Shown: piece by piece, positions 2,890 through 63,141 of the stretch | Numbering within the stretch: the stretch's first letter is position 1 | Layout: every line of letters begins with the position of its first letter | Sequence record: MK250029.1 | DNA length: 64,000 bases | Direction: 5' to 3' (one strand) | Notes under the pieces: model-generated | The model's database searches: none | What the model was told of the DNA's origin: nothing | The model's input: the letters and a program-made list of their open reading frames with translations, nothing else | Position numbers and translations under genes: made by a program

Positions 2890-3728
2890 TTTTCTGATAA
2901 TGTTTTCATTAATTTATATTTTTGATTTCCAAAATCAATAAATGTATTTAATCTATTTACATCAAAATCAAAATTTTGTTTAAACAATTTAAAATTTAAT
3001 CCTTGTTCATTCGGTTGTCTAAGTAAATTACATACATATACACTTATCTTATCATATGAAGATAAACCATATGTTTCTACCAATGCTTTCTTATAAACAT
3101 GTAATTGAATTGTATATGTATTCATATCACACTCATCTAACATATATGCAGGTCCTTGTAATTTCTTACCATATCTTGATGATGTTGTTATATCATCTGT
3201 TGTCTTCCAATCTATTATAATATAAGCATCTGTATTCTCATCATAAAATAAACAATCAAAACGTCCATTAATATGACCATCTTTTGGCGTTTTACAATAT
3301 AATGGTAATTCTCGCGCTACATACTTATAATTTGTTTTAGTTAATATAAAATTATAGAAATCATCAAATCCTTTACAGATTGATTTTAATCTATCATCAT
3401 AATCATAACCGTTATCTAACTTCCATAATTCTAATTTTTCTGTTTCTTTATTAAGATTCATACCGGCATAATCATCCAATAAAGAACCATATCTTTTTGA
3501 CTCTGACGATTTTGCGTGCCATTGTTCAAGGATCTGATTTGCAGTCATACCTGCATATTTATAATTAGGATCATTCAAACCTTTCTTTGAACATACTTCT
3601 GCTTGAGCTACATCATCAAACTTTACTTTAATATAATCATTACATAATTTTGAAACAGATACACAACCTTTATATTCTGTCTTTATCTAATTATTAATAT
3701 TTTCAATTAATTCTTTAATATTCTTCAT
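2868..3728 (-). CDS. PD-(D/E)XK family nuclease (Cas4/RecB-like exonuclease)
   Basis: INGRFDCLFYD...YIIIDWKT and YTIQLHVY motifs; start extended to ATG 3728 across one TAG at codon 14. Confidence 0.75.
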
Positions 3729-4723: not shown

Positions 4724-6391
4724 TTAAATATTCAAATATGTATCTATTACCTATTTGATAACATCTATCTTATTACTCCATATCGGTAAATAATTCNNNN
4801 NNNNNNNNNNNNNNNNNNNAAATTTTAATGGATCAACTACAGTCCATACATTTATAGCTGCTTCATATTGCTTTGATGTTTCTGCATTCTATTTCCAAAT
4901 ATTTAATAACTATATATCATCTTCATTATTTTCGTTAAAAAGATGCTTACCATGCGTCCAATATGCATTTATTTCTATAAATAAATCTAATGAATGTATA
5001 TAGAAATCTACATGAAACGGATAACGTTCATCTACATTTACATTAAACTAAATATCATCTTTATTAAATAATGTCAATAAATATTCATATGTTTGATATT
5101 CTGATTTTGTCATTCCATTATTTTTATTTTTCTATAAACTCTATGTAATTTTATCATATGTTACTTGATAATAGTTTTTAACAGAACCATATTTCTCTAT
5201 ATATGTTTGCTCTTTTTTCTTTAAAACTTTATTCCAATTTTCATTTGCTTCTGGTGTACCTGATAAATATTTTTCATAGTATGAATCTTTCATTTTCTTT
5301 TTTATTTGTTCATTCTACTATGGATATTCACAACCATATCGTTCTATATTTGTTTCTCGTATTTTCTATTTTATTTCGTCAGATTTACCAATATTATCAA
5401 CACCATATTTTTCTAAATTTGTATTTTTAATTTTATTTTTTATCCCATCATTCTATATAGGTGAAGTCACACCATATTTTTCTAAATTTGTATTTTTAAT
5501 TTTATTTTTTATCTCATCATTCTATAATACATATTCAGTACCATATTTTTCTAAACATGTTTGCTTACTTTGTTCTTTTATAATATCTGACTATAAAGCG
5601 AATTTAACACCATATTTTTCTAACATTGTTTCATAACATTTTTCTCGTATTTCTTTATTCTATAATGGTGATGCATAACCAAAATTCTAAATATTTTTTT
5701 CTTTTACATAATTCATTATATCTTTATTCTATAATGCATGTTCAACACCATAATGTTTCATCATAGTATCTTTAGATTTTTGCATTTTTATTTCTTTTAA
5801 TTTATTTGCTTCTTCTGTTCCACTATAATATTTTTCATTAAATGTATCTCTTATTTTATTACGCACTTTATCAGATTTCTATGCACATTCATTTCCATAT
5901 TTTTCTAAATTAGTCTATCGTATTTTCTATTTAACTGATTCTAATTTAAAACAATTATCTACCCCATATTTTTCTATCATATTATTTTTAATCTTGTCTC
6001 TAAATTCCTTTGATTCTAATGTATTCTTTACACCATAACGTTTTAACATTGTTTCTTTGGCTTTATTATTCCAAAATTTATAGCCTTCTGGTGATTTCTA
6101 ACATTTTTTTGAACAATATGTACCATATTTAGAAGTATATGGTATTCTGTTTCCACATATAGGACATTTTGGTATTATTTCTATATGGTGTTCTATACGA
6201 TAAACTATTTCTTTTAATGTTGTATTTTCATCTATATCATTAAATCTATTAATTAAATAATCATATACATTTTTGTTTTCTCTATTTATGTAATTTTTAT
6301 TAAAACGTCTAGATACATATTTTCCATTACATTTAAAAAATTTTAAAATATATTCATCTGTTATATTATTCATATATTTAATTATATTCAT
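4724..6391 (-). CDS. Homing-endonuclease-like protein (Zn finger + EKYG repeats + Vsr/PD-(D/E)XK-like domain), TAG-containing
   Basis: CPICG...YCSKKC, repeated EKYG(V) units, C-terminal YPFHVDFYIHSLDLFIEINAYWTHG; short N-mask near the 3' end. Confidence 0.7.
5401..5526. repeat. 57-bp direct repeat, two copies, 69-bp period (one 23-aa EKYG unit duplicated)
   Basis: caccatatttttctaaatttgtatttttaattttattttttatc(c/t)catcattctata at 5401 and 5470, one mismatch. Confidence 0.9.
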
Positions 6392-6496: not shown

Positions 6497-7789
6497 TTAT
6501 TTTATTGTTGCATCTGCAATAGGATCATTTTCATCATTCTCATCATTAGTTGTACCTAATGAATTTTCAATATCTTTAATATCATCAAATGAATTTTGAT
6601 CTGGTAATTGAAATGCCGGTTTTATAACATTTTCATCTAGCTCTTTTAAAAATTCTGGTGTAAATACAGTATCTGAAAAGAATTCGATAAAATTAACTTG
6701 TCTACCTAAGTGGCGGCATACAATTCCACGAGCTGTATCCTTTTCTTGACAATACAGTGTTTGACCATCATAACTAAAAACATGTATTTTTTCTTTTTCA
6801 GAATCACTTAATTTATTATAATCTCTTTCTGATATTAGACTACCTCTACATACACCTGAATTATCCCATGTCATATATTGCTCTATACCTACATAAGGTG
6901 ACGGTTTTTTAAAAAATGGAATCTAAAAAGTTACTGGGCGAGTAATAACAAAACGACTTTTCTGAGGCTTTGCTGTTACTAAGATACCATTTTTTGTAAC
7001 TTTACCTGCTTGCTTTGCAGCTTTTTCATCATTTTCTTTATCTACTAATTTAGACTTAAATAATTCAATAGTCAAACTGGAATTATAAATGATACCACTA
7101 CCACCGCTAACGACATTACCAGGACTAAACATATTCATACTTGCATATACATGAGAAACAACTACCCATGGAATCTGTAATCTTGCAATAGGTGTAGCAT
7201 TTACTCTAAACATCGCTTTAATTTCCTGTTGTTTTGTCATATCACGTTTTTGATTTCCTGATAATGTATCATCGCGTTCCTTCTCAGAAGTTAAGTTTCC
7301 TAATGAATCAAGAACTATAATTATCTTATCATGTTGACCATATTTTTCATCTTGTTCTTGTAATTTTTTACAAAGATTCGCAATAAATCTTGATGTCTCT
7401 GTAATTGTATTAACCTGTTTAATAATAAATTTTGTCGGATCAGCACCGAGACGTCTTACAAATTCACTATCATATGCACCTTCTGAATCTAACACAATTG
7501 GAGTATACCCCATTTTCTATGCTTCTCTACATATAGAAACAGCTAAATAACTTTTTGCACAACCACTTTCTCCTACTAATGTTGTTACACGTCCAGTTGG
7601 CACACCAGAAAATAATGAACCACCCATACATGCATTAAGCATTAAATTTCCTGTAGGAATCCATTCTTTAATATTAGAATATGCAGAATCTGCAATAATT
7701 TCTGCTTCACTATCTATACTACTTACCATTGACATTATTGAACCAATACCACCATCAAAATCTTCACTTGACTACTTTTTCTTTGCCAT
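6497..7789 (-). CDS. uvsX: RecA/UvsX recombinase (430 aa; three in-frame TAGs)
   Basis: Three track ORFs join in one frame across TAGs at codons 6, 92 and 289: WIPTGNLMLN, Walker A GESGCAKS, CREA(Q)KMGY..VLDSEGA, IIVLDSLGNL, SGGSGIIYNSS. Confidence 0.92.
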
Positions 7790-7914: not shown

Positions 7915-8948
7915 TTACATAATTCCTGTAAGAACGTCATCAAGACTCATATTTGATGCAGGATTAGTTGGAGCTGCTGCAGGAACTCCACCATTAAGAA
8001 TTGAATCAAGTTCACCATTTCCAACACCTGGAATATTAGCGGCATTAAAACCACCTGGTGTTGTCTGATTCATTGATGTTGCATCTGCACCCATCTCAAG
8101 ACCTGTAACTGGTGCAGTAGGCATTGATGTCGGCATTACTGGTTGTGCAGGAGCTGCTGGAGATACTGGAGATACCTGTGGCTGCATAGCTGGTTGCATA
8201 TATGGATTTGCTGCTGGCATTGCTGCTGCCTGCATTCCTGTTGCTGCTTGCATTGAAGCCTGTGGATTTGTATAAATCTTAATACAAGAATTTACAAAAT
8301 TAGTAGTCTCTGATGTCCATGCATGATATTCATATGGTGCAAGTGAAGGACAATTTTCTTTAAGATAATTAAGAACAAGTGGTTTAACATCAGGATTCTG
8401 TGCAATAACTTCCTGTGTAATAACTTGCCAATTTTCCTGTCCCTGCGCATTCTTAACCTGAATACGAAGAGCACCATCCTGTGGTTGAAGATCAATAAAC
8501 TGAGAATCATCAAAATTATTGAAATTTGATACCAACTTACACTTTACATAGAAAGGACGACCAACAAACATATTAAATGGATTTCTTGGTGTACCCATTG
8601 GTGGATTCATTTCATTATAAATCTTCTCATGGATCTTAATACCATAACGCCAAACAAGAATCTTTCCAACTAGTTGAGGCTCTGCCTTACATGAAAGAAT
8701 CTGAATAAGCGATGCATAACGCTGACGACGTGAAAAATGTTTTGAATTTTCCTTAAGAACCGGATTATCACTATTACGAAGTGCAAAGAATGTGTCCTGA
8801 AGAATATCAGGCTGACCAACTGTAGATGGACAATCAACCTCCATCTGAGCATTTGTCAAAGGATTCTTAAGGAATACTGTATTCTTTGAAACGATAGATT
8901 TGTTAGAAGGATCTTCTGGATTTGGAATAAAGCGAATTACTGCATCAT
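7915..8948 (-). CDS. Single-stranded DNA-binding protein, T4 gp32-like (5' end masked)
   Basis: AVIRFIP, CPST, LVGKILVWRYG.KI, NPFNMFVGRPF..K, NFDDSQF pattern; Pro/Ala/Gln-rich tail; adjacent to uvsX. Confidence 0.75.
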
Positions 8949-13841: not shown

Positions 13842-13864
13842 AATAAAATTAATTAAAAAATTAG

Positions 13865-14354
13865 AAGCTTAGATGGGAATCGAACCCATAAAGTTTTTAA
13901 TAACTTACCACACTTATTCACATAAGCAATACTTGAGTAAACTAACAGCTCATCTGTATTTGACTACTGATTTTGATATTATCTCATGATTACTGACTTT
14001 TACTCTCACTACTGTTAACCATTTTTCATTTTTAAGTATTTTGTGGTCTGAACTTTTTTTTACCATATTTAAGTTTGCGCGCTCCTTATTGTAATACCAA
14101 ATGCTCAATGATTAGGTGATAGTCTGCAAATTAACTATACTTCGTGTACTTAAACGTAGGTATCTCCTATAAAGTCTCATCACAATTTATGCTGTAACAC
14201 TACAATTTACATTTAAAATAGATTCACGTTCTATTACAATTTAGTGGAATATAATCTATTATCAAAAATAGATTAATATTCATTAGGGAGATTTTTATCA
14301 CTATGTATTTCTAACATGTGTAAATATTTTTTAAACTTATTCCAAATCTAAGCT
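13865..14354 (-). ncRNA. 490-nt tmRNA-like / tRNA-mimic RNA
   Basis: 5' AGCTTAG pairs with 3' CTAAGCT; T arm ATGGG-TTCGATT-CCCAT; stemless D-loop ATTTGGAAT; long helix AAGTTT..TTTAC.ACA / TGTG.GTAAG..AAACTT; no long ORF; intergenic. Confidence 0.65.
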
Positions 14355-15993: not shown

Positions 15994-17337
15994 AAAGATA
16001 TTGAAATTGATGGTTGTATAGTATGTCATTCTATTGAAGATGCTATCAGTTATTCAAAAGAAATTAAAATGGATTCTGCATTCATTATTGGTGGTGGATC
16101 TATTTATAAAGAAGCAATTAACAAAGATCTTATTGATATTTTATATATTGATTTTTTAAATACAGGTTTATCTGATGAAGATTTTGATACTTATTTTGAA
16201 TTTCCTCCTGTTGAACAAACATATCGTACATGTGAAAATTTAACAGATTATAATCCAAATTCAAATATTAATCCGGTTATTTCATACAGAGAACGTACAT
16301 TTGTTACAACTGATTATGATTATTTGTCATTAATGAATAAAATTATTAAAAATGGAAAAACAAAACATACACGTGCAGGTGAAACATTATCTATTTTTGG
16401 TGAAATGCTTTCATTTGATTTAAGAAAAGGTTTACCTATTCTCACAACAAAGAAAGTGTATTCAAAAGGTTGTATTCATGAATTGTTATGGATTTTACAT
16501 GGTGATACAAATATAAAGTATCTTGTTGAAAATAATACTCATATATGGGATGATGATGCATACAGATATTATTTGCAGAAATTTGAATCTGATAAAGATG
16601 TAAAGACAACAAAAGAACAGTTTATTAACCGTGTAATTAAACAGGATATTATTCATTATGTTGAAGATGGTGATATGAATAGCNNNNNNNNNNNNNNNNN
16701 NNNNNNNNNNNNNNNNNNNNNNNNNNNNNNNNNNNNNNNNNNNNNNNNNNNNNNNNNNNNNNNNNNNNNNNNNNNNNNNNNNNNNNNNNNNNNNNNNNNN
16801 NNNNNNNNNNNNNNNNNNNNNNNNNNNNNNNNNNNNNNNNNNNNNNNNNNNNNNNNTTGTCATTACTTATCACAATGGTATGTAACTGAAATGAATAACT
16901 ATGAAAGAAATGAAGAATATCATAAAAGATATAATATCAATGTAGATGATAATAAACTATTATCTGATGAAGAATTAGATAAATTAGGAATTCCACATCA
17001 ATATTTAAGCTGTATGTGGATGCAGAGATCTGTTGATACATGTTTAGGTTTACCATATGATTTATTGAGTTATTCTATATTAACTCATCTTATTGCACAG
17101 ATTTGTAATATGGTTCCTTATGAAGTTAAATGTTCACTTGGTGATTGTCATATATATAAGAACCAGTTATCCGGTGCAATTAAACAAATTCAGAGAAATC
17201 CGTTTAAATATGAACCTGCACAACTTGTGCTTAATAAAGAAATTAAAGATATTAATGATTTTAAATATGATGATATTAAAATTGTAAATTATAATTCATA
17301 TTCAACAGTTAAATATCCACTTTCTGTTGGACTTTAA
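15994..17337 (+). CDS. thyA: Bifunctional dihydrofolate reductase-thymidylate synthase (5' part masked)
   Basis: DHFR C-half (IVCHSIEDAI, AFIIGGGSIYKEA) in frame with ThyA motifs (LPILTTKKV, ELLWILHGDTN, QRSVDTCLGLPYD, GDCHIYKN). Confidence 0.9.
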   Translation, partial: KDIEIDGCIVCHSIEDAISYSKEIKMDSAFIIGGGSIYKEAINKDLIDILYIDFLNTGLSDEDFDTYFEFPPVEQTYRTCENLTDYNPNSNINPVISYRERTFVTTDYDYLSLMNKIIKNGKTKHTRAGETLSIFGEMLSFDLRKGLPILTTKKVYSKGCIHELLWILHGDTNIKYLVENNTHIWDDDAYRYYLQKFESDKDVKTTKEQFINRVIKQDIIHYVEDGDMNSXXXXXXXXXXXXXXXXXXXXXXXXXXXXXXXXXXXXXXXXXXXXXXXXXXXXXXXXXXCHYLSQWYVTEMNNYERNEEYHKRYNINVDDNKLLSDEELDKLGIPHQYLSCMWMQRSVDTCLGLPYDLLSYSILTHLIAQICNMVPYEVKCSLGDCHIYKNQLSGAIKQIQRNPFKYEPAQLVLNKEIKDINDFKYDDIKIVNYNSYSTVKYPLSVGL

Positions 17338-17343
17338 AAAAAT

Positions 17344-17377
17344 AAAGGTTGAAACATTCCAAAATGTTTCAACCTTT
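17344..17377. terminator. Hairpin between convergent thyA and CLec gene
   Basis: AAAGGTTGAAACATT-ccaa-AATGTTTCAACCTTT, perfect 15-bp stem. Confidence 0.75.
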
Positions 17378-17393
17378 TATATTTAAATATATA

Positions 17394-18284
17394 TTATACT
17401 TCTAAAGCTAAGAAACCTAAGACAGGGTAGTCTGCATACTTACCGGTGTTGTAGACGCGTCCATCATCGAGACCGAAACTGCGCACATCGTCTTTATCGT
17501 ACTCTCTACTACTCCAATAATTGTTGTCCTCACTAAAACCACTACCTTTTATAGCTGTACGTTTTTCATTTATAACTGTTTTGTTTGCATAAATTTGATA
17601 TAATTCGCCAGGCATTGGTAAATACCAGTCACCGGATTTAGTACCAGGTGTTGAATATGCAACACAACAACATGCAGGTGCACAATAACCTGCATCAGGA
17701 TTATTTGTTACTCCATCACATATGTTCTAATCCTGATTTGTTGCTTTAGATAAACATTGTTGTGTATTCCATTTACCTCCTATATATGCAATTTTTTCAG
17801 TTCCACCCTTTACATTACCTACATCAACGCTATCATTTCCAAAATACATATCCACATCTTGTGGAAGTGGATTTCCATTTGCTGGTGTTTTATAATCCAT
17901 ATAATTTATAGAAACAAATCTGGCTGTTTTAACAGCACCCGTTGAATCATCACCATTTTTGAAGTTTTCAGTAACCTCGGGAATTACACAAATTGCAATT
18001 GCAGTGTTATTCACATTATTTGTCTATGCATCAAGTGTTAACTTACCATCTGAAGTTGAATAAAGAATATCTGCAACAGCAGGTTTCTTTTTACTAGATG
18101 AAGCATCCAATTTAACTGGTTCCATATTTACTGAACCTAACATCAAACAATTAGGTCCAGGATGTCTTTCATCTATAAATTTAGTCGTCTAAGACTGATA
18201 TACAAATGCACCATCTTTATGATGAATCTATAAAGCAGCTTCATTCATTAATTCATCAGTTGCAAACTATTTAATAAATTTCAT
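17394..18284 (-). CDS. DUF1566/C-type-lectin-fold protein, candidate DGR target (296 aa, five TAGs)
   Basis: Joins track ORFs 17727-18014 and 17394-17615; C-terminus GDWYLPMPGEL..IY.N...IN...YWSSREY...F.LDDG.V...K...VLGFLAL. Confidence 0.8.
17412..17528 (-). repeat. Putative DGR variable repeat (VR)
   Basis: 16 of 39 codons end in C; 54/117 bases G+C (46%) in a very AT-rich genome; located at the 3' end of a CLec-fold gene. Confidence 0.65.
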
Positions 18285-18424
18285 AAATAATATATTTTTT
18301 ATTATATTTATACTGACAATTACTAACTTTTATGGAATCTTATAACTTTATAAACATAACTAAATAGAATATTTCATAATTAAGTTATATTTTTATAAAA
18401 ACTTAATATTTTATCAAATTTCTA

Positions 18425-18928
18425 TCAATTTAATCCTATTTTCTTCAGTTTTTCATATAAATTTTGATAAAATTTTTCAACCAGTATAATATATCTTGAA
18501 TTACCATTTTCATCTATAATTTCATTAAAATAATCAGAATATTTTTCAACAATTTGTTTTACATATTCACTTTCATTATTTTTATAAATTACATATTGTG
18601 CATCAACTTCTTGTTTAGCATTTCTTGGACAATTAGTCTTTGTATAGTGTGAACATTCCCAATCGATAATAGTTGCTTCATAATCATAATTATCACATTT
18701 ATGATATTTTCCCATTTGTAAAAAATAATATTCTGGATGATGTTTATTATGAAATCTATGAAATTTCTGTAATGTTTTATATGGTACTATTAATTTAAGA
18801 AATGGTTTTTCCATATCATGAAACAGATATTTAAATTTCCAGCATTTTTGATTTAATGCAACCATATTAAATGAACACCAGTGTGCAAACCAATATTTAA
18901 ATGAACTTCTTTCTGCTTTATCAAACAT
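18425..18928 (-). CDS. HD-domain-like protein (DUF5662-like)
   Basis: H...FHD.EK...H...NKHHPEY...IIDW pattern. Confidence 0.55.
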   Translation of the reverse strand: MFDKAERSSFKYWFAHWCSFNMVALNQKCWKFKYLFHDMEKPFLKLIVPYKTLQKFHRFHNKHHPEYYFLQMGKYHKCDNYDYEATIIDWECSHYTKTNCPRNAKQEVDAQYVIYKNNESEYVKQIVEKYSDYFNEIIDENGNSRYIILVEKFYQNLYEKLKKIGLN

Positions 18929-27813: not shown

Positions 27814-27851
27814 ATTATTTCTTATTTAATTATTATTGTTATTAACTAATA

Positions 27852-27859
27852 CAAAGATA
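27852..27859 (-). promoter_or_regulatory. Bacteroidetes-type -7 promoter element (TATCTTTG)
   Basis: Minus strand TTTTTTATTTCATGGAAAATATGTATCTTTGT upstream of the 27813 start. Confidence 0.7.
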
Positions 27860-27995
27860 CATATTTTCCATGAAATAAAAAAATAATATATATAAAAAAT
27901 AAATATTTCTCCTGTATCGCATTATTTTTAACTTACCTTAATACTTTACTATATAAGATATTTGGATGCGATACAGAAGAAATATGATATGAAAT

Positions 27996-30259: not shown

Positions 30260-30461
30260 TTGTTACATTTTTAGATTCAACAATAAAACCGTTTCCGATT
30301 TCTCTTGCAACACGAGATGCATACTCAATGTTATTGTAAATTCCGTAATACCAGTTACCATCAGGACATTCCCTTGCAACTGTATATCTATAATCATTAA
30401 TATATTCAGAAAATCTTGCTGGAAGATTCTTAATAATATGTCTTGGATCAATATTTGCCAT
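30252..30461 (-). CDS. Hypothetical protein
   Basis: 69-aa ORF after promoter at 30491. Confidence 0.6.
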   Translation of the reverse strand: MANIDPRHIIKNLPARFSEYINDYRYTVARECPDGNWYYGIYNNIEYASRVAREIGNGFIVESKNVTNG

Positions 30462-30490
30462 AATTTTATATTTTTAAATTTTTTATATTA

Positions 30491-30498
30491 CAAAGATA
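30491..30498 (-). promoter_or_regulatory. Bacteroidetes-type -7 promoter element
   Basis: TTTTTTATTTAAAAACAAATGTGTATCTTTGT on minus strand. Confidence 0.7.
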
Positions 30499-30522
30499 CA
30501 CATTTGTTTTTAAATAAAAAAA

Positions 30523-31464
30523 TTATTCTGGAAAAACTTCTATATTTTTTAAATTCCTAAAATCTGATACATTATATTTTAATGTTAACTTAATCACATT
30601 TCCATATAATACGCAGTTACCTCTTGATATTTCTACATTTCTTGAACTTTGACAAAATATTCCAGCACCATCATTATATCGTTCACATCTAATTAATCTT
30701 GCATGTTCACGTAATGCTTTATCAGAATATAAACAATTTACAGTATTACCTAAATTATCTCTTAATATAAATGAGAAATAACCTAATCTTGTAATTGTGT
30801 TTACTGCTTCATTAAATTTATTAATCTGAAATTTAACATACTCATTTGACATATCATAATGTTTGTATGCATCGGACAATGCTTTATTATATACATTTTG
30901 AAATGTATTTTGTTGTATAATATTATCTGTACATTTAATACTAATATTAAGAATTACTTTATTTCCATATATAACTGGTTCATCAACATCCAATTTATAA
31001 TTATAACATTGTGTTGAAATATCTGTAAGTTTCTCTAATACATGATTGAATGAAATATGTACACTTTCATTATTAGAACCTGTTACTTCATTATTTGCTA
31101 TTAATGAAGAACCATTTATGGAAACAGATGAACCATGATTATTAACATATTTGTTTAACTTATCAACAGATACAATAACATTCAGTTTAATTGTTTTTGT
31201 TGATTCATTATATTCTATTTCTTTATATGACTTAATATAACCATTTGTGATCATTACAGTTTCATCTGTAAATAAGTCTTCTGTATTAATTGATGAACGT
31301 GATGATATATAAGTTCCATATGCATCTGCAAGAGCAAATCTCAATGCAGATAAAGTAGCTTCTTGCTTATTCTTACCAGTACCGCAAGATTTTACCAAAA
31401 CATCATTACAATAACAATTAATACATGTTATATAAAGAAATAAAAATATAATGAATCGTTTCAT
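30523..31464 (-). CDS. Secreted LPP20-like envelope protein
   Basis: Signal peptide; G.GKNKQEA..SALR.AL..AYGTYISS....N......E....TNGYIKSYK. Confidence 0.6.
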   Translation of the reverse strand: MKRFIIFLFLYITCINCYCNDVLVKSCGTGKNKQEATLSALRFALADAYGTYISSRSSINTEDLFTDETVMITNGYIKSYKEIEYNESTKTIKLNVIVSVDKLNKYVNNHGSSVSINGSSLIANNEVTGSNNESVHISFNHVLEKLTDISTQCYNYKLDVDEPVIYGNKVILNISIKCTDNIIQQNTFQNVYNKALSDAYKHYDMSNEYVKFQINKFNEAVNTITRLGYFSFILRDNLGNTVNCLYSDKALREHARLIRCERYNDGAGIFCQSSRNVEISRGNCVLYGNVIKLTLKYNVSDFRNLKNIEVFPE

Positions 31465-34254: not shown

Positions 34255-36171
34255 ATGACAACAAAGAAATTAACGATTGAACAGAAGTATAAAAGTATGA
34301 CAGAAGTTGAACATATCCTCCAGAAATCTGGTATGTGGATCGGTTCAATTAATAAAGAAGATAAGAATTTATATGTTTATGACAATGATAATTGTAAGAT
34401 GATTATGAAAACAGTCTCATATATTCCAGCGGTTTTAAAGTTAGTAGATGAGATTATTTCAAATTCAGTAGACGAATATAGAAGAATTGATAATTTAGGA
34501 CTTACAAACCTTGATGTGAAAATTGATACAAACGGTTTTATTACTATTAGAGATAATGGTGGTATTCCTGTTGTAAAACATAAAGAAGCTGGTATTTATG
34601 TACCTACATTTTTGTTTGGTTCTCTGAGAACTTCATCAAATTATAATGATGATGATTCACGAGATGGCGTAGGAACAAATGGTGTAGGTTCTGCTATTAC
34701 AAATGTATGGTCAACACAATATGAAGTAAGTACAGCAGACGGAAAGAATTCATATCATCAAACATGGTCTAATAATATGAATATAAATGATGATCTAGAA
34801 ATAAAGAAATGTTCGAAGAAAGATCATTATACAGAAACAAAGTTTAAGTTAGATTTTAAGAGACTTCATGAAACTGTAGATACATGTTTCTCTGAAGATT
34901 TTATCAATATCATAGAGAAAAGATGTATTGATGCAGCTGCTGCAAACGTTGGATTAAATGTACATTTTTCATATACAGATAATGACAAGGTTATCAGAGA
35001 ATCAGAATGGCATTTCAAAACATTTGATGAATATATTGAATTATTTACTGATTATGTAGATACAGAACAAATGTTGAAATTCTCTGATTCTATTATGCAA
35101 GTATGGGTATTTCCTGATAATGGAATTAATGTCGGATTTGTAAATGGTGCAGAATGTTCAAGAGGAACACATATCAGAGCAGTTAGAAATGAGATTAACA
35201 ATGCTATTTCTGCTTATCTTTTAACAAAAGAAAAGATTGACATTACACCAAAGAATGTAGATGGAAAATATTCAATGTTCTGTACATTCCATGTTAATAA
35301 TCCATCATATGATTCACAGACAAAGGAATGTTTGACAACTGTTGTTGAGAAATTCAGTAATGATTCCAAATATACATTTAAAGTTCCAGATGCATTTATT
35401 AAGAATGTATTAAAATCTGAGATTGTTGATATAGTAATTGATTGGTATAAGCAAAAATGTGAAGTTGAAGATCAGAAAACACTTCGAAAACTTAATAGGC
35501 AAGCAAAGAATAAGATTAGAAATAACGATAAATTCATTGATGCAAATTCAAAACGAACAGCAGATAGAGAACTTTGGATATTTGAGGGTGATTCTGCACG
35601 TGCAGGATTCAGAGGTGCTCGTGACCCACAAACACAAGCGGCATATATGTTGAGAGGTGTTATTTTGAATGTTATCGGATTACCACCAACAAAAATTATG
35701 GCAAATAAAGAGTTATCTGATTTGTTTAATATTATCGGTTTACAATGGGGTGAACCAATCGATGTAAAGAAACTTAATTTCAGTAAATTAGTTATTGCAA
35801 CAGATGCTGATTTTGATGGTAGTAAAATTGCTGGATTGCTTTTAACATTCTTTAATTTATGGCCAGAATTATTTGAAGCAGGAATTGTATGCAGAAGTAT
35901 TACACATATTATTACTGCAACTAAAGGTAATGATGTACAAGGATTCTTTACAATGGAAGACTTCAAAAAGAAAGAAGATAAATTAAAGGGTTATAAGATT
36001 ACATATAATAAAGGTCTTGGTGGATTAACAGCAACAGAATATAAAGAGATGATGCGTAATCCGATTTTACATTATTATACTAAAGATGATTTAGCAGATA
36101 TGACTATTAAATCATGGTTTGGTAAAGGTATTGCAAAAACTCGTAAAGATATGCTTAAAAATGAAGTTTAA
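34255..36171 (+). CDS. Type II DNA topoisomerase large (ATPase+TOPRIM) subunit, T4 gp39/60-like
   Basis: EIISNSVDE, RDNGGIP, TSSNY..G.NGVG, FEGDSA, LRGVILN, ATDADFDG, YNKGLG. Confidence 0.95.
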   Translation: MTTKKLTIEQKYKSMTEVEHILQKSGMWIGSINKEDKNLYVYDNDNCKMIMKTVSYIPAVLKLVDEIISNSVDEYRRIDNLGLTNLDVKIDTNGFITIRDNGGIPVVKHKEAGIYVPTFLFGSLRTSSNYNDDDSRDGVGTNGVGSAITNVWSTQYEVSTADGKNSYHQTWSNNMNINDDLEIKKCSKKDHYTETKFKLDFKRLHETVDTCFSEDFINIIEKRCIDAAAANVGLNVHFSYTDNDKVIRESEWHFKTFDEYIELFTDYVDTEQMLKFSDSIMQVWVFPDNGINVGFVNGAECSRGTHIRAVRNEINNAISAYLLTKEKIDITPKNVDGKYSMFCTFHVNNPSYDSQTKECLTTVVEKFSNDSKYTFKVPDAFIKNVLKSEIVDIVIDWYKQKCEVEDQKTLRKLNRQAKNKIRNNDKFIDANSKRTADRELWIFEGDSARAGFRGARDPQTQAAYMLRGVILNVIGLPPTKIMANKELSDLFNIIGLQWGEPIDVKKLNFSKLVIATDADFDGSKIAGLLLTFFNLWPELFEAGIVCRSITHIITATKGNDVQGFFTMEDFKKKEDKLKGYKITYNKGLGGLTATEYKEMMRNPILHYYTKDDLADMTIKSWFGKGIAKTRKDMLKNEV

Positions 36172-36242
36172 TAACAATATTGAAATTCCATATGTTAAAT
36201 ATAAAAAAACATATGGAATTTTTAATTATAAAAATAAAAATG

Positions 36243-36250
36243 TATCTTTG
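36243..36250 (+). promoter_or_regulatory. Bacteroidetes-type -7 promoter element upstream of folD
   Basis: tttttaattataaaaataaaaatgTATCTTTGt. Confidence 0.7.
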
Positions 36251-36271
36251 TAAAAATAATTTAGGAATAAA

Positions 36272-53790: not shown

Positions 53791-53868
53791 ATAATAATTA
53801 AAATGTATTTTATTATTTATTTTTAGATAATAATTCATGAAATATTTTTTTAATTAAAATATTATATG

Positions 53869-53876
53869 TATCTTTG
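53869..53876 (+). promoter_or_regulatory. Bacteroidetes-type -7 promoter element
   Basis: tttttttaattaaaatattatatgTATCTTTGa. Confidence 0.7.
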
Positions 53877-53906
53877 AGTCACATAATAATTAATGAATAA
53901 TATAAT

Positions 53907-54281
53907 ATGGTATTAAATATAGACGATTTTGAAGTATTGAAATTTTATGGGTATACAAGTCTAATACCTATAAATGCTCGTATTAATGAAGTGTCATCAA
54001 TAGATGATAATCCAAGAGAACAAATACGTTATAAAAAATTAGAATCCTTTTATAATAAGGTAATTGAAAAAGCAAAGGAAAAATGTACAAATAAAAGTTT
54101 TAAGTATTGTCATTTTGAAGATAATAAATGTGTATTTTGTTTATCACATATTAAAACAGGTCATATTATCTATATAGGTAAATATGATTTTGAAATATCG
54201 ATAGGTCTTGATTTCAAACAGATATTTGGTCCATCATATAATTTTTTATTTAATAAAGAATCATATAAGAATGAAGAGTAA
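53907..54281 (+). CDS. Hypothetical protein
   Basis: 124-aa ORF after promoter. Confidence 0.6.
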   Translation: MVLNIDDFEVLKFYGYTSLIPINARINEVSSIDDNPREQIRYKKLESFYNKVIEKAKEKCTNKSFKYCHFEDNKCVFCLSHIKTGHIIYIGKYDFEISIGLDFKQIFGPSYNFLFNKESYKNEE

Positions 54282-58282: not shown

Positions 58283-58347
58283 AATAAAAATAATATCCAT
58301 TAAGAAAAAAAACTTAGTGGATATTTTTTTATATAAAGAATTATATG

Positions 58348-58355
58348 TATCTTTG
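58348..58355 (+). promoter_or_regulatory. Bacteroidetes-type -7 promoter element
   Basis: ttttttatataaagaattatatgTATCTTTGt. Confidence 0.7.
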
Positions 58356-58391
58356 TATTGTAATTAAATAACAATTTAAATAATAAAGAAT

Positions 58392-60802: not shown

Positions 60803-60829
60803 TTATTTTTTTAATTGAAATAAAATATG

Positions 60830-60837
60830 TATCTTTG
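60830..60837 (+). promoter_or_regulatory. Bacteroidetes-type -7 promoter upstream of a noncoding cluster
   Basis: ttttttaattgaaataaaatatgTATCTTTGt; no long ORF follows for over 1 kb. Confidence 0.7.
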
Positions 60838-60849
60838 TATTGTAAATAA

Positions 60850-61165
60850 TGAACACCTATAAGTGTTAAGTAACATAGGTATGGAAACCCTACGGTTCGT
60901 AAGTAGTAATATCGAATAGTCCGCATAATAGGAACATGTCATTATTTTAACATTTATATAAGAATATACTACATGTCTTATATGAGCGTCAGGAGTATTG
61001 TAACAGAGTCGACGTGTTTACATTTTTAGAGGCGCAGCTTTTAAATCTGACTATTCTACGTAAAGTAGTGTTCTATGTAAAGTAGTGAAGTGCAAGATAC
61101 GGCGTCAGTACAAGTCTATATAATAAGTTGCAAATAAAAATAGAAACTGTTAAAATTCGTATCTA
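60850..61165 (+). ncRNA. Putative structured ncRNA, family unknown
   Basis: GC-elevated, no long ORF, several hairpins, tandem 17-mer ttcta(c/t)gtaaagtagtg (61054-61087). Confidence 0.4.
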
Positions 61166-61562: not shown

Positions 61563-61655
61563 ATTATAATAGTGTAGCGGTTCGCACGCCCGTTGGTAAA
61601 ACGGGAAGGGTTTATGTTTGAAAGCATATTAGGGGTTCGACTCCCGCTTATAAAC
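61563..61655 (+). tRNA. Degenerate class II tRNA, nominal Tyr(GTA)
   Basis: D stem GTGT/GCAC, anticodon stem CCCGT-TGGTAAA-ACGGG, variable hairpin, GGG-TTCGACT-CCC; G33, weak T stem, 6-bp all-AT acceptor. Confidence 0.45.
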
Positions 61656-61942
61656 AATTAAATTACATAATGTTCTCACGAAGAGCGAGCATCGGAAGGT
61701 GAGCAATTTAGAAAGATATTTAAGAGTGATCATATTAAATTGATTTCTAACAGAAATACGGTGACGTAGGAGCTGAAAAAGAACAAACGTATGGTAATGT
61801 TAACATTATGTATTTTTAAAAAATTTTATTTTTTTCCACACAGACTTTGATACATTTTTTGTATCATATATTATATTTAATTTTGAAGTTAAATCAGATG
61901 CTTGTGATAAGTATCTGATTTTTTTAATTCATAAAAAATATG

Positions 61943-61950
61943 TATCTTTG
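61943..61950 (+). promoter_or_regulatory. Bacteroidetes-type -7 promoter upstream of nadR-pnuC
   Basis: tttttaattcataaaaaatatgTATCTTTGt. Confidence 0.7.
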
Positions 61951-61980
61951 TAATATATTAAATAATAATTAAATAATTAA

Positions 61981-63141
61981 ATGATTAAGAATATAGGAAT
62001 TTGTTTTGGTGGTTATTGTCCTATGCATCAGGGACATCTTGACCTTATAATGAAAGCAAAGAAAGAAAATGATATTTGTTATGTGGTTGTTTGTGGTTAT
62101 ACAGATGAACCACGTGGTAATGAATTAGGTCTTAATATTAATAATAGAAAAAGACTTATTAAAGAGTTTTTTAAAAATGATGAACTTATTCGAGTTCTTA
62201 CTGTAAATGATACAGAATTAGGTATTGATGAAAGTATGTCTGAACATAATTGGAAAGTATGGACAGATTATGTAAAATATCAAATTACAGATGATCTTTG
62301 GGGTGGTGGTCCGACATATCCATTTAGTCCAGATGAAAGGATTGAAGCGCATGAATTGAAACTTACATTCTATGTTGGTGAAAAGTTCTATGTTGAATCA
62401 TTGAATAAATTAAATATTAATGCAGTGTTAGTTGGTTACGATGAGAATTCACCATCTAATAGAAGTAATGATATATCAGCAACATATATTAGGCAAAATC
62501 CTCAATATTATTGGGATAAGATTGTATCAACATTTAAACCTGCATTAACAAAGAAAATTCTTGTATTAGGTACAGCATCAGAAGGAAAATCAACACTTGT
62601 TAAAGATATTGGTAATTATTTTAATATACCATATACAACAGAATTCGGTAGAGATTATATGGAGAAACATTGTATGTTAGATCCTGATATTACTGTAAAT
62701 GATTTTGTTGAATTCCTTATTGGACAGAGACAATACTATTTTGATGCTTTGAATGATAAAGGAAATAAGGGTGTTATCATTTCAGATACTGATAATCTCG
62801 TTACACTTATGTATGCAAAAGCATATGTATCTGATAATAATATGCAAATTACTGAAGATGAATATAACAATATATTGAAACCACTTGCAAAATCATTACA
62901 AACAGGTGTTTCATGGGATGTAATTTATCTTATCAAACCGCATAATAAATTTGTTGATGATGGAACACGTTACATGAATCAATCTTCAATAGATGAGAGA
63001 ATGAAGAATTATAAAATTCTTTTATCATTACTTGAAGAGTTCGGTTTACTTGATAAGGTAATTGAATTGAATGGTTCTTATATGGATCATTTTAATTATG
63101 TTAAGGATTATATCACAAAATTATATGATAAAGAAAATTAA
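61981..63141 (+). CDS. nadR: NadR-type NMN adenylyltransferase / nicotinamide riboside kinase
   Basis: FGGYCPMHQGH (HxGH), SATYIR, then P-loop LGTASEGKST, EFGRDY, SDTD, FVDDGTR. Confidence 0.92.
   Translation: MIKNIGICFGGYCPMHQGHLDLIMKAKKENDICYVVVCGYTDEPRGNELGLNINNRKRLIKEFFKNDELIRVLTVNDTELGIDESMSEHNWKVWTDYVKYQITDDLWGGGPTYPFSPDERIEAHELKLTFYVGEKFYVESLNKLNINAVLVGYDENSPSNRSNDISATYIRQNPQYYWDKIVSTFKPALTKKILVLGTASEGKSTLVKDIGNYFNIPYTTEFGRDYMEKHCMLDPDITVNDFVEFLIGQRQYYFDALNDKGNKGVIISDTDNLVTLMYAKAYVSDNNMQITEDEYNNILKPLAKSLQTGVSWDVIYLIKPHNKFVDDGTRYMNQSSIDERMKNYKILLSLLEEFGLLDKVIELNGSYMDHFNYVKDYITKLYDKEN

What the first reader, a model, noticed from the sequence alone, without database searches (positions are those of the whole stretch)
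17394..18284. Orphan DGR target: variable-repeat signature at the end of a C-type-lectin-fold gene
Seen: the last ~40 codons switch abruptly to 46% GC, and 16/39 end in C (GAC AAC..TAC..GAC..CGC..TTC..CTC..CGC GTC TAC AAC ACC..GAC TAC..GTC..TTC), while the rest of the genome strongly prefers A/T third positions. The protein ends in the GDWYLP.GEL..YWSS.E..G.V..K motif. Known: DGRs overwrite a 3' VR of CLec-fold genes from an AAC-rich template by adenine mutagenesis, leaving NNC codons. No template repeat or reverse transcriptase is visible in unmasked sequence, so this would be a remote (trans) target of a DGR elsewhere in a recoded megaphage, or a relic. The gene has five TAGs and a TATAAATA upstream, consistent with a late virion receptor-binding protein.
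Basis: partly seen in the sequence, partly recalled or inferred. Interest (0 to 1): 0.85.

Follow-up and report, generated by a model that had tools for sequence, protein, structure and literature searches.

The report
Relic hypermutation site in giant phage
The end of this giant-phage gene carries the scar of a reverse-transcriptase-driven hypermutation system (a DGR) that a sister phage still has but this phage has deleted, so its once-variable binding site is now frozen.

Summary
The gene at 17394-18284 (-) is 296 aa with five TAG=Q codons. Its codons 251-288 have 47% GC, against 33% for the rest of the gene, and 15/38 end in C, against 11/250 (p=1e-8). The window is the last 64 kb of Prevotella phage Lak-C1 (MK250029.1).

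A sister megaphage, G001 (553,716 bp), has a complete DGR: an Avd-fold protein, an AAC-rich template repeat (TR), a 676-aa DGR-type RT and six variable repeats (VRs). One VR is in this gene's counterpart. The window VR differs from that TR at 25/56 adenines and 11/82 other bases.

Across 120 related protein clusters, entropy is about 3 bits at the TR-adenine codons and near 0 between them. The protein model matches a Bacteroides type V pilin and the Lcl C-terminal (DUF1566) domain.

Lak-C1 has no RT and no TR anywhere. The syntenic site shows a microhomology-flanked deletion of about 5.7 kb. In seven of eight close variants the VR is identical while other residues change. The eighth differs only by point mutations.

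Verdict: an orphaned, frozen DGR target. The late-promoter argument is not supported, and read-level variation could not be tested.

The parts
17394..18284 (-). Target gene, 296 aa, five in-frame TAG read as Q. It belongs to a large Lak-phage paralogue family.
   Evidence: 1064 related 90% clusters; TAG aligns with CAA/CAG in paralogues.
17547..18119 (-). Scaffold part of the conserved module (aa 56-246): beta-rich, pilin-like region plus the first helices of the lectin-like domain. It includes the GDWYLP..GEL motif.
   Evidence: AF2 model with pLDDT 91.4. Foldseek hit 4eps, Bacteroides ovatus fimbrial protein, E 1.4e-4 over 266 columns. 4EPS is the type V pilin reference for Bacteroides DGR variable proteins (10.1101/2024.11.15.621889).
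17405..17546 (-). Full stretch homologous to the template repeat of related Lak phages (aa 247-294).
   Evidence: Alignments with the G001 TR and eight further TRs.
17421..17534 (-). Variable core (codons 251-288), high in GC and in NNC codons. It is now fixed in this lineage.
   Evidence: Composition. 25/56 TR-adenine sites changed against 11/82 other sites, p = 6e-5. Family entropy peaks at exactly these codons. Identical in 7 of 8 nearest variants.
17405..17423 (-). Invariant 3' segment GTCTTAGGTTTCTTAGCTT, shared by all VRs and the TR. It is IMH-like: homologous but not mutagenised although it contains adenines.
   Evidence: L289-A293 invariant in 120 clusters.
17394..17404 (-). VR-specific tail TAGAAGTATAA, including the stop codon. 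The TR reads ACTAAATATAA here, so this is the point where VR and TR diverge, like IMH versus IMH*.
17344..17377 (.). Perfect 15-bp hairpin with a 4-nt loop followed by a T-run, between the convergent target and DHFR-TS genes. Most likely a bidirectional intrinsic terminator. A role in DGR target recognition is not shown.
   Evidence: dG -15.8 kcal/mol, z -6.3. Similar stem plus T-run follows 5 of 7 VRs but not the other two.
18305..18312 (-). TATAAATA upstream of the start codon. It has no evidential value as a promoter.
   Evidence: 31 matches in the window against 40 expected from shuffles.

Best explanation
The 3' end of this Lak-C1 gene is a variable repeat (VR) written in the past by a diversity-generating retroelement (DGR). 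In related Lak megaphages a cassette encodes an Avd-fold accessory protein, a ~140-nt AAC-rich template repeat (TR) and a 676-aa DGR reverse transcriptase. That cassette copies TR RNA into cDNA with random bases opposite adenines. The cDNA replaces the VRs of up to six dispersed paralogous genes, each encoding a pilin-like scaffold that ends in a C-type-lectin-like (Lcl_C/DUF1566) ligand-binding domain. This explains the island of high GC and C-ending codons in a 26% GC genome. The Lak-C1 lineage has since lost the whole cassette through a deletion of about 5.7 kb between short direct repeats. The VR is no longer rewritten. It has kept one fixed sequence, has picked up changes at positions that the TR would otherwise reset, and now evolves only by ordinary point mutation. 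Shown: the TR/VR relation, the adenine bias, the absence of RT and TR, the deletion junction and the invariance among close variants. Inferred: the order of events, that the protein is a host-surface binding protein, and that it is still functional.
For: The window is Lak-C1 MK250029.1, positions 476218-540217.

The sister genome G001 has an RT with IGNLTSQ and YVDD motifs. It scores over the PF00078 cut-off, matches phrog_1423 at 2e-64, has the BPP-1 bRT 8ub7_A as best PDB match at 1e-26, and finds known phage DGR RTs by tblastn.

The G001 131-aa accessory protein folds as a four-helix bundle matching BPP-1 Avd (4dwl and 8ub7 chains, TM about 0.8). The TR lies between the two genes.

The six G001 VRs differ from the TR at 130/336 adenine sites and 17/492 other sites, p = 3e-40. 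The window VR differs at 25/56 and 11/82, p = 6e-5.

The same cassette and a nearly identical TR occur in eight further metagenomic contigs with RTs 82-98% identical.

Family entropy is about 3 bits at TR-adenine codons and near 0 at scaffold codons. Lcl_C is hit in 37/61 family members, and the fold matches 4eps and 8q4e.

No RT and no TR was found in all 540,217 bases of Lak-C1 by protein, HMM or DNA search. At Lak-C1 148,767/148,780 the flanks of the G001 cassette abut. A shared CTTATTG microhomology and a 23-nt remnant of the neighbouring coiled-coil gene mark the junction.

In seven of eight variants that are 93-100% identical, the VR matches the window's residue for residue in six and differs only at A293T, in the invariant tail, in the seventh. 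Their substitutions lie elsewhere. The eighth differs by 9 single-base changes and keeps the same deviant scaffold, so it was not re-written from a TR.
Against: A minority of diversified haplotypes, or a cassette-bearing subpopulation that the curated MAG left out, cannot be excluded.

Lak-A1 also lacks the RT, yet its orthologous VR is only about 55% identical to the window VR while the gene flanks are about 100% identical. This requires independent late losses, recombination, or diversification in trans.

The 8-11 non-adenine mismatches could partly reflect an unknown lineage-specific TR rather than drift. The TR of contig L057 already removes two of them.

RT-bearing contigs are all short (at most 44 kb) apart from G001, so complete genomes may be biased towards DGR-less phages.
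Confidence: 0.8

Rival explanations
1. The VR is an active remote target of a DGR encoded elsewhere in the same Lak-C1 genome.
For: In the sister genome G001 the counterpart gene is such a remote target, about 206-348 kb from the RT.
Against: No RT was found by protein, by PF00078 HMM at E<=10 or by DNA over the whole 540,217-bp record. The only four TR-like stretches all continue upstream as coding sequence of target genes. The VR is invariant among the closest variants.
Confidence: 0.03
2. The VR is still diversified now and then, in trans, by the Avd-TR-RT machinery of a co-infecting RT-bearing Lak phage. RT-less phages would then keep retrohoming-competent VRs and borrow the enzyme.
For: The 3' IMH-like segment, the VR-specific tail and the 5' homology TATTGGAGTAGTAGAGAG are intact and identical to those of the G001 VRs. 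DGR core components work in trans (Wu et al. 2018, PMC5758913). The VRs of RT-less Lak-A1 and Lak-C1 differ strongly between near-identical flanks. RT-bearing Lak contigs are common: the cluster of P0132 has 361 members.
Against: Homing from any known Lak TR would reset the non-adenine positions. The window lineage instead keeps 8-11 such deviations (D263, K264, R268, F270 and others), and the P0127 variant shares them. Seven variants have the same VR.
Confidence: 0.1
3. The cassette is absent only from the assembly. Lak-C1 is a curated metagenome-assembled genome, and repeat-rich, variable DGR regions are easily collapsed or skipped.
For: All RT-bearing contigs other than G001 are short, 3-44 kb, which suggests that assemblies break at this locus.
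Against: The junction is specific, with microhomology and a remnant. Three other junction forms (63 bp, about 660 bp) occur in Lak-A2, Lak-A1, G002 and G003. Independent contigs of 331-544 kb carry the same or a near-identical allele. The VR is static.
Confidence: 0.05
4. The signal is unrelated to a DGR: a compositional island from horizontal transfer, or selection for Tyr/Asn/Asp/Gly-rich binding loops.
For: Binding loops rich in Y/N/D/G occur without DGRs. The non-adenine mismatch rate (13%) is higher than in active VRs.
Against: The stretch aligns base for base with a bona fide TR, with significant adenine bias. The variable and invariant codons of the family coincide with TR adenine and non-adenine positions. 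The boundary coincides with the point where VR and TR diverge.
Confidence: 0.02

Closest known systems
Bordetella phage BPP-1 DGR (mtd-avd-TR-brt)
   Same: In the sister phage: an Avd-fold accessory protein, an AAC-rich TR, an RT with the I/LGxxxSQ motif, adenine-specific TR-to-VR differences, a VR at the 3' end of a lectin-fold binding protein, and an invariant 3' homology followed by a VR/TR-specific tail.
   Different: The RT is 676 aa with an unexplained C-terminal extension of about 280 aa. There are six targets rather than one, five of them 137-348 kb from the RT. The target domain is of the Lcl_C/DUF1566 type, not Mtd. In the window's own genome the avd, TR and RT are absent.
DUF1566/Lcl_C ('category d', CLec2) DGR targets and Bacteroides type V pilin-like variable proteins
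   Same: Lcl_C hits in the family. Fold matches to the Lcl C-terminal domain 8q4e and the pilin 4eps. 4EPS is the reference structure for 'domain group 1' Bacteroides DGR variable proteins, 70% of which are prophage-encoded (10.1101/2024.11.15.621889). DUF1566 targets make up 14% of curated DGRs (PMC5758913).
   Different: The gene is encoded by a lytic-type, TAG-recoded half-megabase phage. The window protein itself scores below the Pfam cut-off (19.4 against 34.9 bits). This copy has no cognate TR.
Cellular DGRs with many remote targets (for example Treponema, seven non-adjacent targets)
   Same: One RT/TR serves several dispersed paralogous VRs more than 100 kb away (PMC5758913).
   Different: Wu et al. 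expected remote targets not to occur in phage DGRs, because they would not travel with the phage. Here all targets lie inside a 554-kb phage genome.
Published Lak megaphage genomes (Lak-A1, A2, B1-B9, C1)
   Same: The window is Lak-C1 itself.
   Different: The Lak papers searched mention no DGR, retroelement or reverse transcriptase. A jumbo-phage survey reported no DGR-type lectin (FGS) domains in jumbo phages (PMC7824862). No GenBank Lak record gave a close (>=60% identity) RT match, and the four records searched whole have no RT at all (C1; A1, A2 and B7).

Membership tests
DGR variable repeat (target of mutagenic retrohoming) | A cognate template repeat is present in the same genome | tested here: not met
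   Lak-C1 has four TR-like stretches, and all are the 3' ends of coding target genes. There is no AAC-rich non-coding copy. A TR exists only in relatives.
DGR variable repeat (target of mutagenic retrohoming) | TR/VR mismatches fall overwhelmingly at TR adenines | tested here: met
   Against the G001 TR: 25/56 adenines and 11/82 others, p = 6e-5. Against the L057 TR core: 24/41 and 8/40. This is weaker than in the active G001 VRs, 130/336 and 17/492.
DGR variable repeat (target of mutagenic retrohoming) | A DGR-clade reverse transcriptase is present in the genome | tested here: not met
   None in the whole MK250029.1 record. Present in G001 and in eight metagenomic contigs.
DGR variable repeat (target of mutagenic retrohoming) | An accessory protein (Avd or similar) is present | tested here: not met
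   No DNA match to the G001 avd in Lak-C1, and none in the window by tblastn. In G001 the 131-aa protein has the Avd fold.
DGR variable repeat (target of mutagenic retrohoming) | A 3' homology element (IMH) at the VR end, with a differing counterpart (IMH*) at the TR end | tested here: met
   GTCTTAGGTTTCTTAGCTT is shared. After it the VRs read TAGAAGT and the TRs read ACTAAAT. This is a sequence feature only; its function was not tested.
DGR variable repeat (target of mutagenic retrohoming) | Hypervariability confined to the VR among related sequences | tested here: inconclusive
   Met across the family: about 3 bits at TR-adenine codons in 120 clusters. Not met within the Lak-C1 lineage: the VR is identical in 7 of 8 variants. 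Read-level diversity is untested.
C-type-lectin-like Lcl_C / DUF1566 domain | Sequence match to PF07603 and the corresponding fold | tested here: met
   The window protein scores 19.4 bits, below the 34.9 cut-off, but 37/61 family members match, best E 2.3e-11. The model matches 8q4e_A at E 4.7e-4, rmsd 2.9 A over 85 columns.
Phage receptor-binding or virion protein expressed late | Virion association, a late promoter, or a position in a structural module | not testable with these tools
   TATAAATA is not enriched. The neighbours are a DHFR-TS gene and a 167-aa ORF of unknown function. No proteomic or transcript data were examined.

The most novel reading that the evidence does not exclude
RT-less Lak megaphages such as Lak-C1 keep their VRs competent for retrohoming, with intact 5' homology and IMH-like end. 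They get them rewritten now and then by the Avd-TR-RT of a co-infecting RT-bearing Lak phage. The DGR would then act as a shared resource within a phage population. This would also explain the very different VRs of Lak-A1 and Lak-C1 between near-identical flanks.
Probability: 0.1. Interest if true: 0.75.

Novelty: new member of a known kind. Interest (0 to 1): 0.5.

Why it matters
DGRs are well known, and the window feature is a member of that kind, in a decayed state. Three points go beyond the routine.

1. Neither DGRs nor their lectin-type targets are reported for Lak megaphages in the papers I could search. One jumbo-phage survey states that no such domains were found.

2. The sister genome shows a phage DGR serving six targets spread over hundreds of kilobases. 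A large DGR survey did not expect that arrangement for phages.

3. The published complete Lak genomes that were searched lack the RT but keep the VRs. This offers a natural before-and-after comparison of how a hypervariable binding site evolves once the mutator is lost.

The paralogue family is also a concrete candidate for the unknown host-recognition proteins of these uncultured Prevotella phages.

Tried and rejected
Read-level variation. The look-up of sequencing runs found wastewater and pig-gut runs holding the gene. One search, made earlier, had included them.

TATAAATA as a late promoter. Rejected: it is not enriched.

The hairpin after the VR as a DGR recognition element. Not adopted: it looks like a terminator, and it is missing after two G001 VRs that are clearly TR-related.

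Scans of viral contigs. The peptide-pattern scans and a TR/VR DNA pattern returned essentially only G001 and two partial relatives. Further TRs came from protein look-ups instead.

The roughly 660-bp filler at the cassette site in Lak-A1, G002 and G003. Its weak matches to the G001 avd region are in the wrong orientation and overlap a dispersed intergenic repeat. I did not count them as a remnant.

Rfam on the other high-GC spot found nothing. That spot is a Pro/Ala/Gln-rich coding tail.

Masked (N) stretches were not filled. Locus L019, fetched automatically and covering the window's own region in the public record, was not read.

Full report
**1. What is in the window**

The - strand ORF 17394..18284 encodes 296 aa if its five in-frame TAG codons are read as Q. 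In paralogues these TAG codons align mostly with CAA or CAG. The conserved DAQTN position alternates only between TAG and CAA. Lak phages are described as alternatively coded (PMC8346664 abstract).

Codons 251-288 (window 17421-17534) have 47.4% GC. The rest of the gene has 32.9%, and 114-nt windows average 25.9%. Only 0.26% of such windows reach the VR value. Of the 38 codons, 15 end in C, against 11 of the other 250 (p = 1.2e-8). The unmasked window holds no second copy and no RT.

**2. Where the window comes from**

The region is 100% identical to Prevotella phage Lak-C1, MK250029.1, a 540,217-bp circular record from human faeces in Bangladesh. Window position x corresponds to record position 476217+x. 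The nearest genome held is G001, IMGVR_UViG_3300045988_166570, 553,716 bp. Its length matches the 553,716-bp Lak-A1-like genome of the MGV catalogue (PMC8241571).

**3. A complete DGR in the sister genome**

A search of G001 with the last 241 nt of the gene gave seven related stretches. One of them, at 354,880-355,029, is non-coding and AAC-rich. It lies 40 nt upstream of a 676-aa ORF that passes the PF00078 cut-off.

That ORF has these properties:
- It carries the DGR-type motif IGNLTSQ and a YVDD motif.
- It matches phrog_1423 (reverse transcriptase) at 2e-64.
- Its best solved relative is the BPP-1 bRT, 8ub7_A, at 1e-26.
- By tblastn it finds the RTs of BPP-1 and of the DGR-bearing Bacteroides phages F1, F2 and F4.

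About 245 nt upstream of the TR lies a 131-aa ORF with no Pfam hit. Its model is a four-helix bundle whose best matches include BPP-1 Avd (4dwl and chains of 8ub7-8ube, TM about 0.8, rmsd 2-3 A).

The other six stretches are the 3' ends of paralogous genes at 6.9, 8.0, 133.6, 218.1, 357.3 and 529.1 kb. They differ from the TR at 130 of 336 adenine sites and at only 17 of 492 other sites (p = 3e-40). After the shared GTCTTAGGTTTCTTAGCTT, all VRs read TAGAAGT where the TR reads ACTAAAT. This is an IMH/IMH*-like distinction. G001 therefore has a canonical DGR with one adjacent target and five remote targets.

The cassette is not a one-off. RTs 98%, 88% and 82% identical occur on pig-gut and other gut metagenome contigs, with the same gene order and nearly identical TRs. 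The 98% cluster has 361 member sequences.

**4. The window VR is a product of such a TR**

Aligned to the G001 TR, the window VR differs at 25 of 56 adenines and 11 of 82 other bases (p = 6e-5). The TR of contig L057 reads AACAATAGTAAC where G001 reads AACTCAAGTAAC. This removes two of the non-adenine mismatches, so part of the excess reflects TR differences between lineages.

The gene lies in the same neighbourhood as the G001 tandem pair at 6.2-8.2 kb: a 167-aa ORF on one side and DHFR-TS on the other. It aligns with both members of the pair. Lak-C1 therefore has one gene where G001 has two.

**5. The protein**

Pfam gives a sub-threshold Lcl_C (DUF1566) hit for the window protein. The same family is hit by 37 of 61 relatives, best E 2.3e-11.

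The AlphaFold model has pLDDT 91.4. It matches the Bacteroides ovatus fimbrial protein 4eps at E 1.4e-4 and the Legionella Lcl C-terminal domain 8q4e at E 4.7e-4. Weaker hits are animal C-type lectins.

4EPS is the reference for the largest group of Bacteroides DGR variable proteins (10.1101/2024.11.15.621889). DUF1566-type VRs form 'category d' of curated DGR targets (PMC5758913).

The family is very large, with 1064 clusters at 90% identity. Among the 120 closest clusters, entropy is about 3 bits at residues 251-255, 262, 265, 266, 269, 271, 273, 274, 276, 278-281 and 283-287. The residues there are Y/N/D/G/S-rich, the spectrum expected from AAC codons. Entropy is near 0 at the interleaved scaffold residues.

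**6. Lak-C1 has lost the mutator**

Three searches covered all 540,217 bases: the RT protein, PF00078 at E<=10, and the 14-kb G001 cassette region as DNA. None found an RT, avd or TR.

The four TR-like stretches lie at 284.8, 285.5, 366.2 and 493.6 kb. The last is the window copy. All continue upstream as coding sequence.

The flanks of the G001 cassette are 92-98% identical to Lak-C1 and abut at 148,767/148,780. The junction reads ...ATATG CTTATTG CTAGTACATTTGCAGA.... CTTATTG occurs both in the right flank and inside the neighbouring coiled-coil gene of G001. The next 16 nt (23 nt counting CTTATTG) are a remnant of that gene's 3' end. A second small deletion between GCAGA repeats follows. This is the signature of a deletion in Lak-C1, not of an insertion in G001.

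The same site holds 63 bp in Lak-A2 and about 660 bp in Lak-A1, G002 and G003. None of these, nor Lak-B7, has the RT. No GenBank Lak record gave a close RT match.

**7. The VR is frozen**

The 90% cluster of the window protein contains eight other full-length variants, found on contigs of up to 544 kb. In six of them residues 251-296 are identical to the window. A seventh differs only at A293T, in the invariant tail. Their substitutions fall at residues 69, 90-95, 141, 151-155, 180 and 196.

The eighth, P0127, is 93% identical. It differs by 9 single-base changes in the 114-nt VR, against 25 in the other 777 nt (p = 0.03). All nine change the amino acid. It keeps the same unusual scaffold (GATA.AG.C, GTGCGC, TTC, GGACGC). 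It therefore descends from the same fixed VR by point mutation, not from a fresh TR copy.

The window protein departs from the family's almost invariant scaffold at D263, K264, V267, R268 and F270. This is what is expected once TR-templated resetting has stopped.

**8. What remains open**

Lak-A1 also lacks the RT. Its orthologous VR is only about 55% identical to the window VR and has a 12-nt indel, yet the first 290 nt of the gene and the downstream flank are about 100% identical. The four Lak-A1 records are identical to each other here. The possible explanations are independent recent losses (the junctions differ), recombination, or diversification in trans during co-infection. I rate the last at about 0.1.

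Read-level diversity could not be measured. Whether the protein is a virion receptor-binding protein is inferred from fold alone. TATAAATA upstream is uninformative, and the downstream hairpin looks like a terminator.

**9. Comparison with what is known, and novelty**

The mechanism is that of the BPP-1 DGR, and the target is of the known DUF1566/pilin-like class.

What I did not find described:
- The Lak papers do not mention DGR, retroelement or reverse transcriptase.
- The jumbo-phage survey reports no DGR-type lectin domains.
- The global DGR survey could not detect remote targets.
- Wu et al. expected no remote targets (>100 kb) in phage DGRs.

The window feature itself is a new member of a known kind, in a decayed state. 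The sister-genome system is an unusual variant of it.

Noticed in passing
G001 (locus L010 4411-10120; G001 352.4-358.1 kb) and G001 6.9, 8.0, 133.6, 218.1, 529.1 kb: A complete phage DGR (coiled-coil gene, Avd-fold gene, TR, 676-aa RT, adjacent target) serves five further targets 137-348 kb away inside a 554-kb phage genome. A large survey did not expect remote targets in phage DGRs.
   Followed up: yes
L010 8270-9101 (RT residues ~400-676): The Lak RT has a C-terminal extension of about 280 aa, absent from ordinary DGR RTs of about 330-450 aa. The extension is conserved in the 98%, 88% and 82% RT clusters. No domain was assigned.
   Followed up: no
Lak-C1 record 283.6-285.7 kb (locus L022 450-2486): A 678-aa gene carries two tandem copies of the module, one VR in the middle of the protein and one at its end. 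In G001 the related genes are separate.
   Followed up: partly
window 17394-18491 versus G001 5.5-8.7 kb: The single window gene aligns with both members of a tandem pair of target genes in G001. This points to a tandem duplication in G001 or an unequal-recombination loss in Lak-C1.
   Followed up: partly
window 7915-8859 (-), especially 8011-8171: This is the only spot in the window with higher GC (about 52%) than the VR. It is the Pro/Ala/Gln-rich C-terminal tail of a 314-aa ORF, next to a 430-aa ORF (6497-7789) with a Walker A motif (GESGCAKS). There is no Rfam match.
   Followed up: partly
window ~27818-27901, 30460-30523, 36163-36261, 53827-53909, 58322-58384, 60805-60853, 61918-61990 (from record coordinates): Short dispersed intergenic repeats of 50-100 bp, 75-88% alike, occur dozens of times across Lak-C1. 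They also flank the G001 DGR cassette (L010 ~3590-3660 and ~13864-13948). A longer repeat (L010 ~5890-6180) has at least four copies.
   Followed up: no
window 16069-17337 (+), partly masked: The convergent neighbour is a fused dihydrofolate reductase-thymidylate synthase gene. Its counterpart in a related contig (L064) carries PF00186 and PF00303.
   Followed up: no
window 61563-61655 (+): tRNA-Tyr (GTA) is the only tRNA that ARAGORN finds in the window. No TAG-reading suppressor tRNA lies in these 64 kb.
   Followed up: no
loci L056-L063: Apart from G001, every contig carrying the Lak RT is short (3-44 kb), while RT-less Lak genomes assemble to about 540 kb. Assemblies may break at active DGR loci, which would bias complete genomes towards DGR-less phages.
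   Followed up: no
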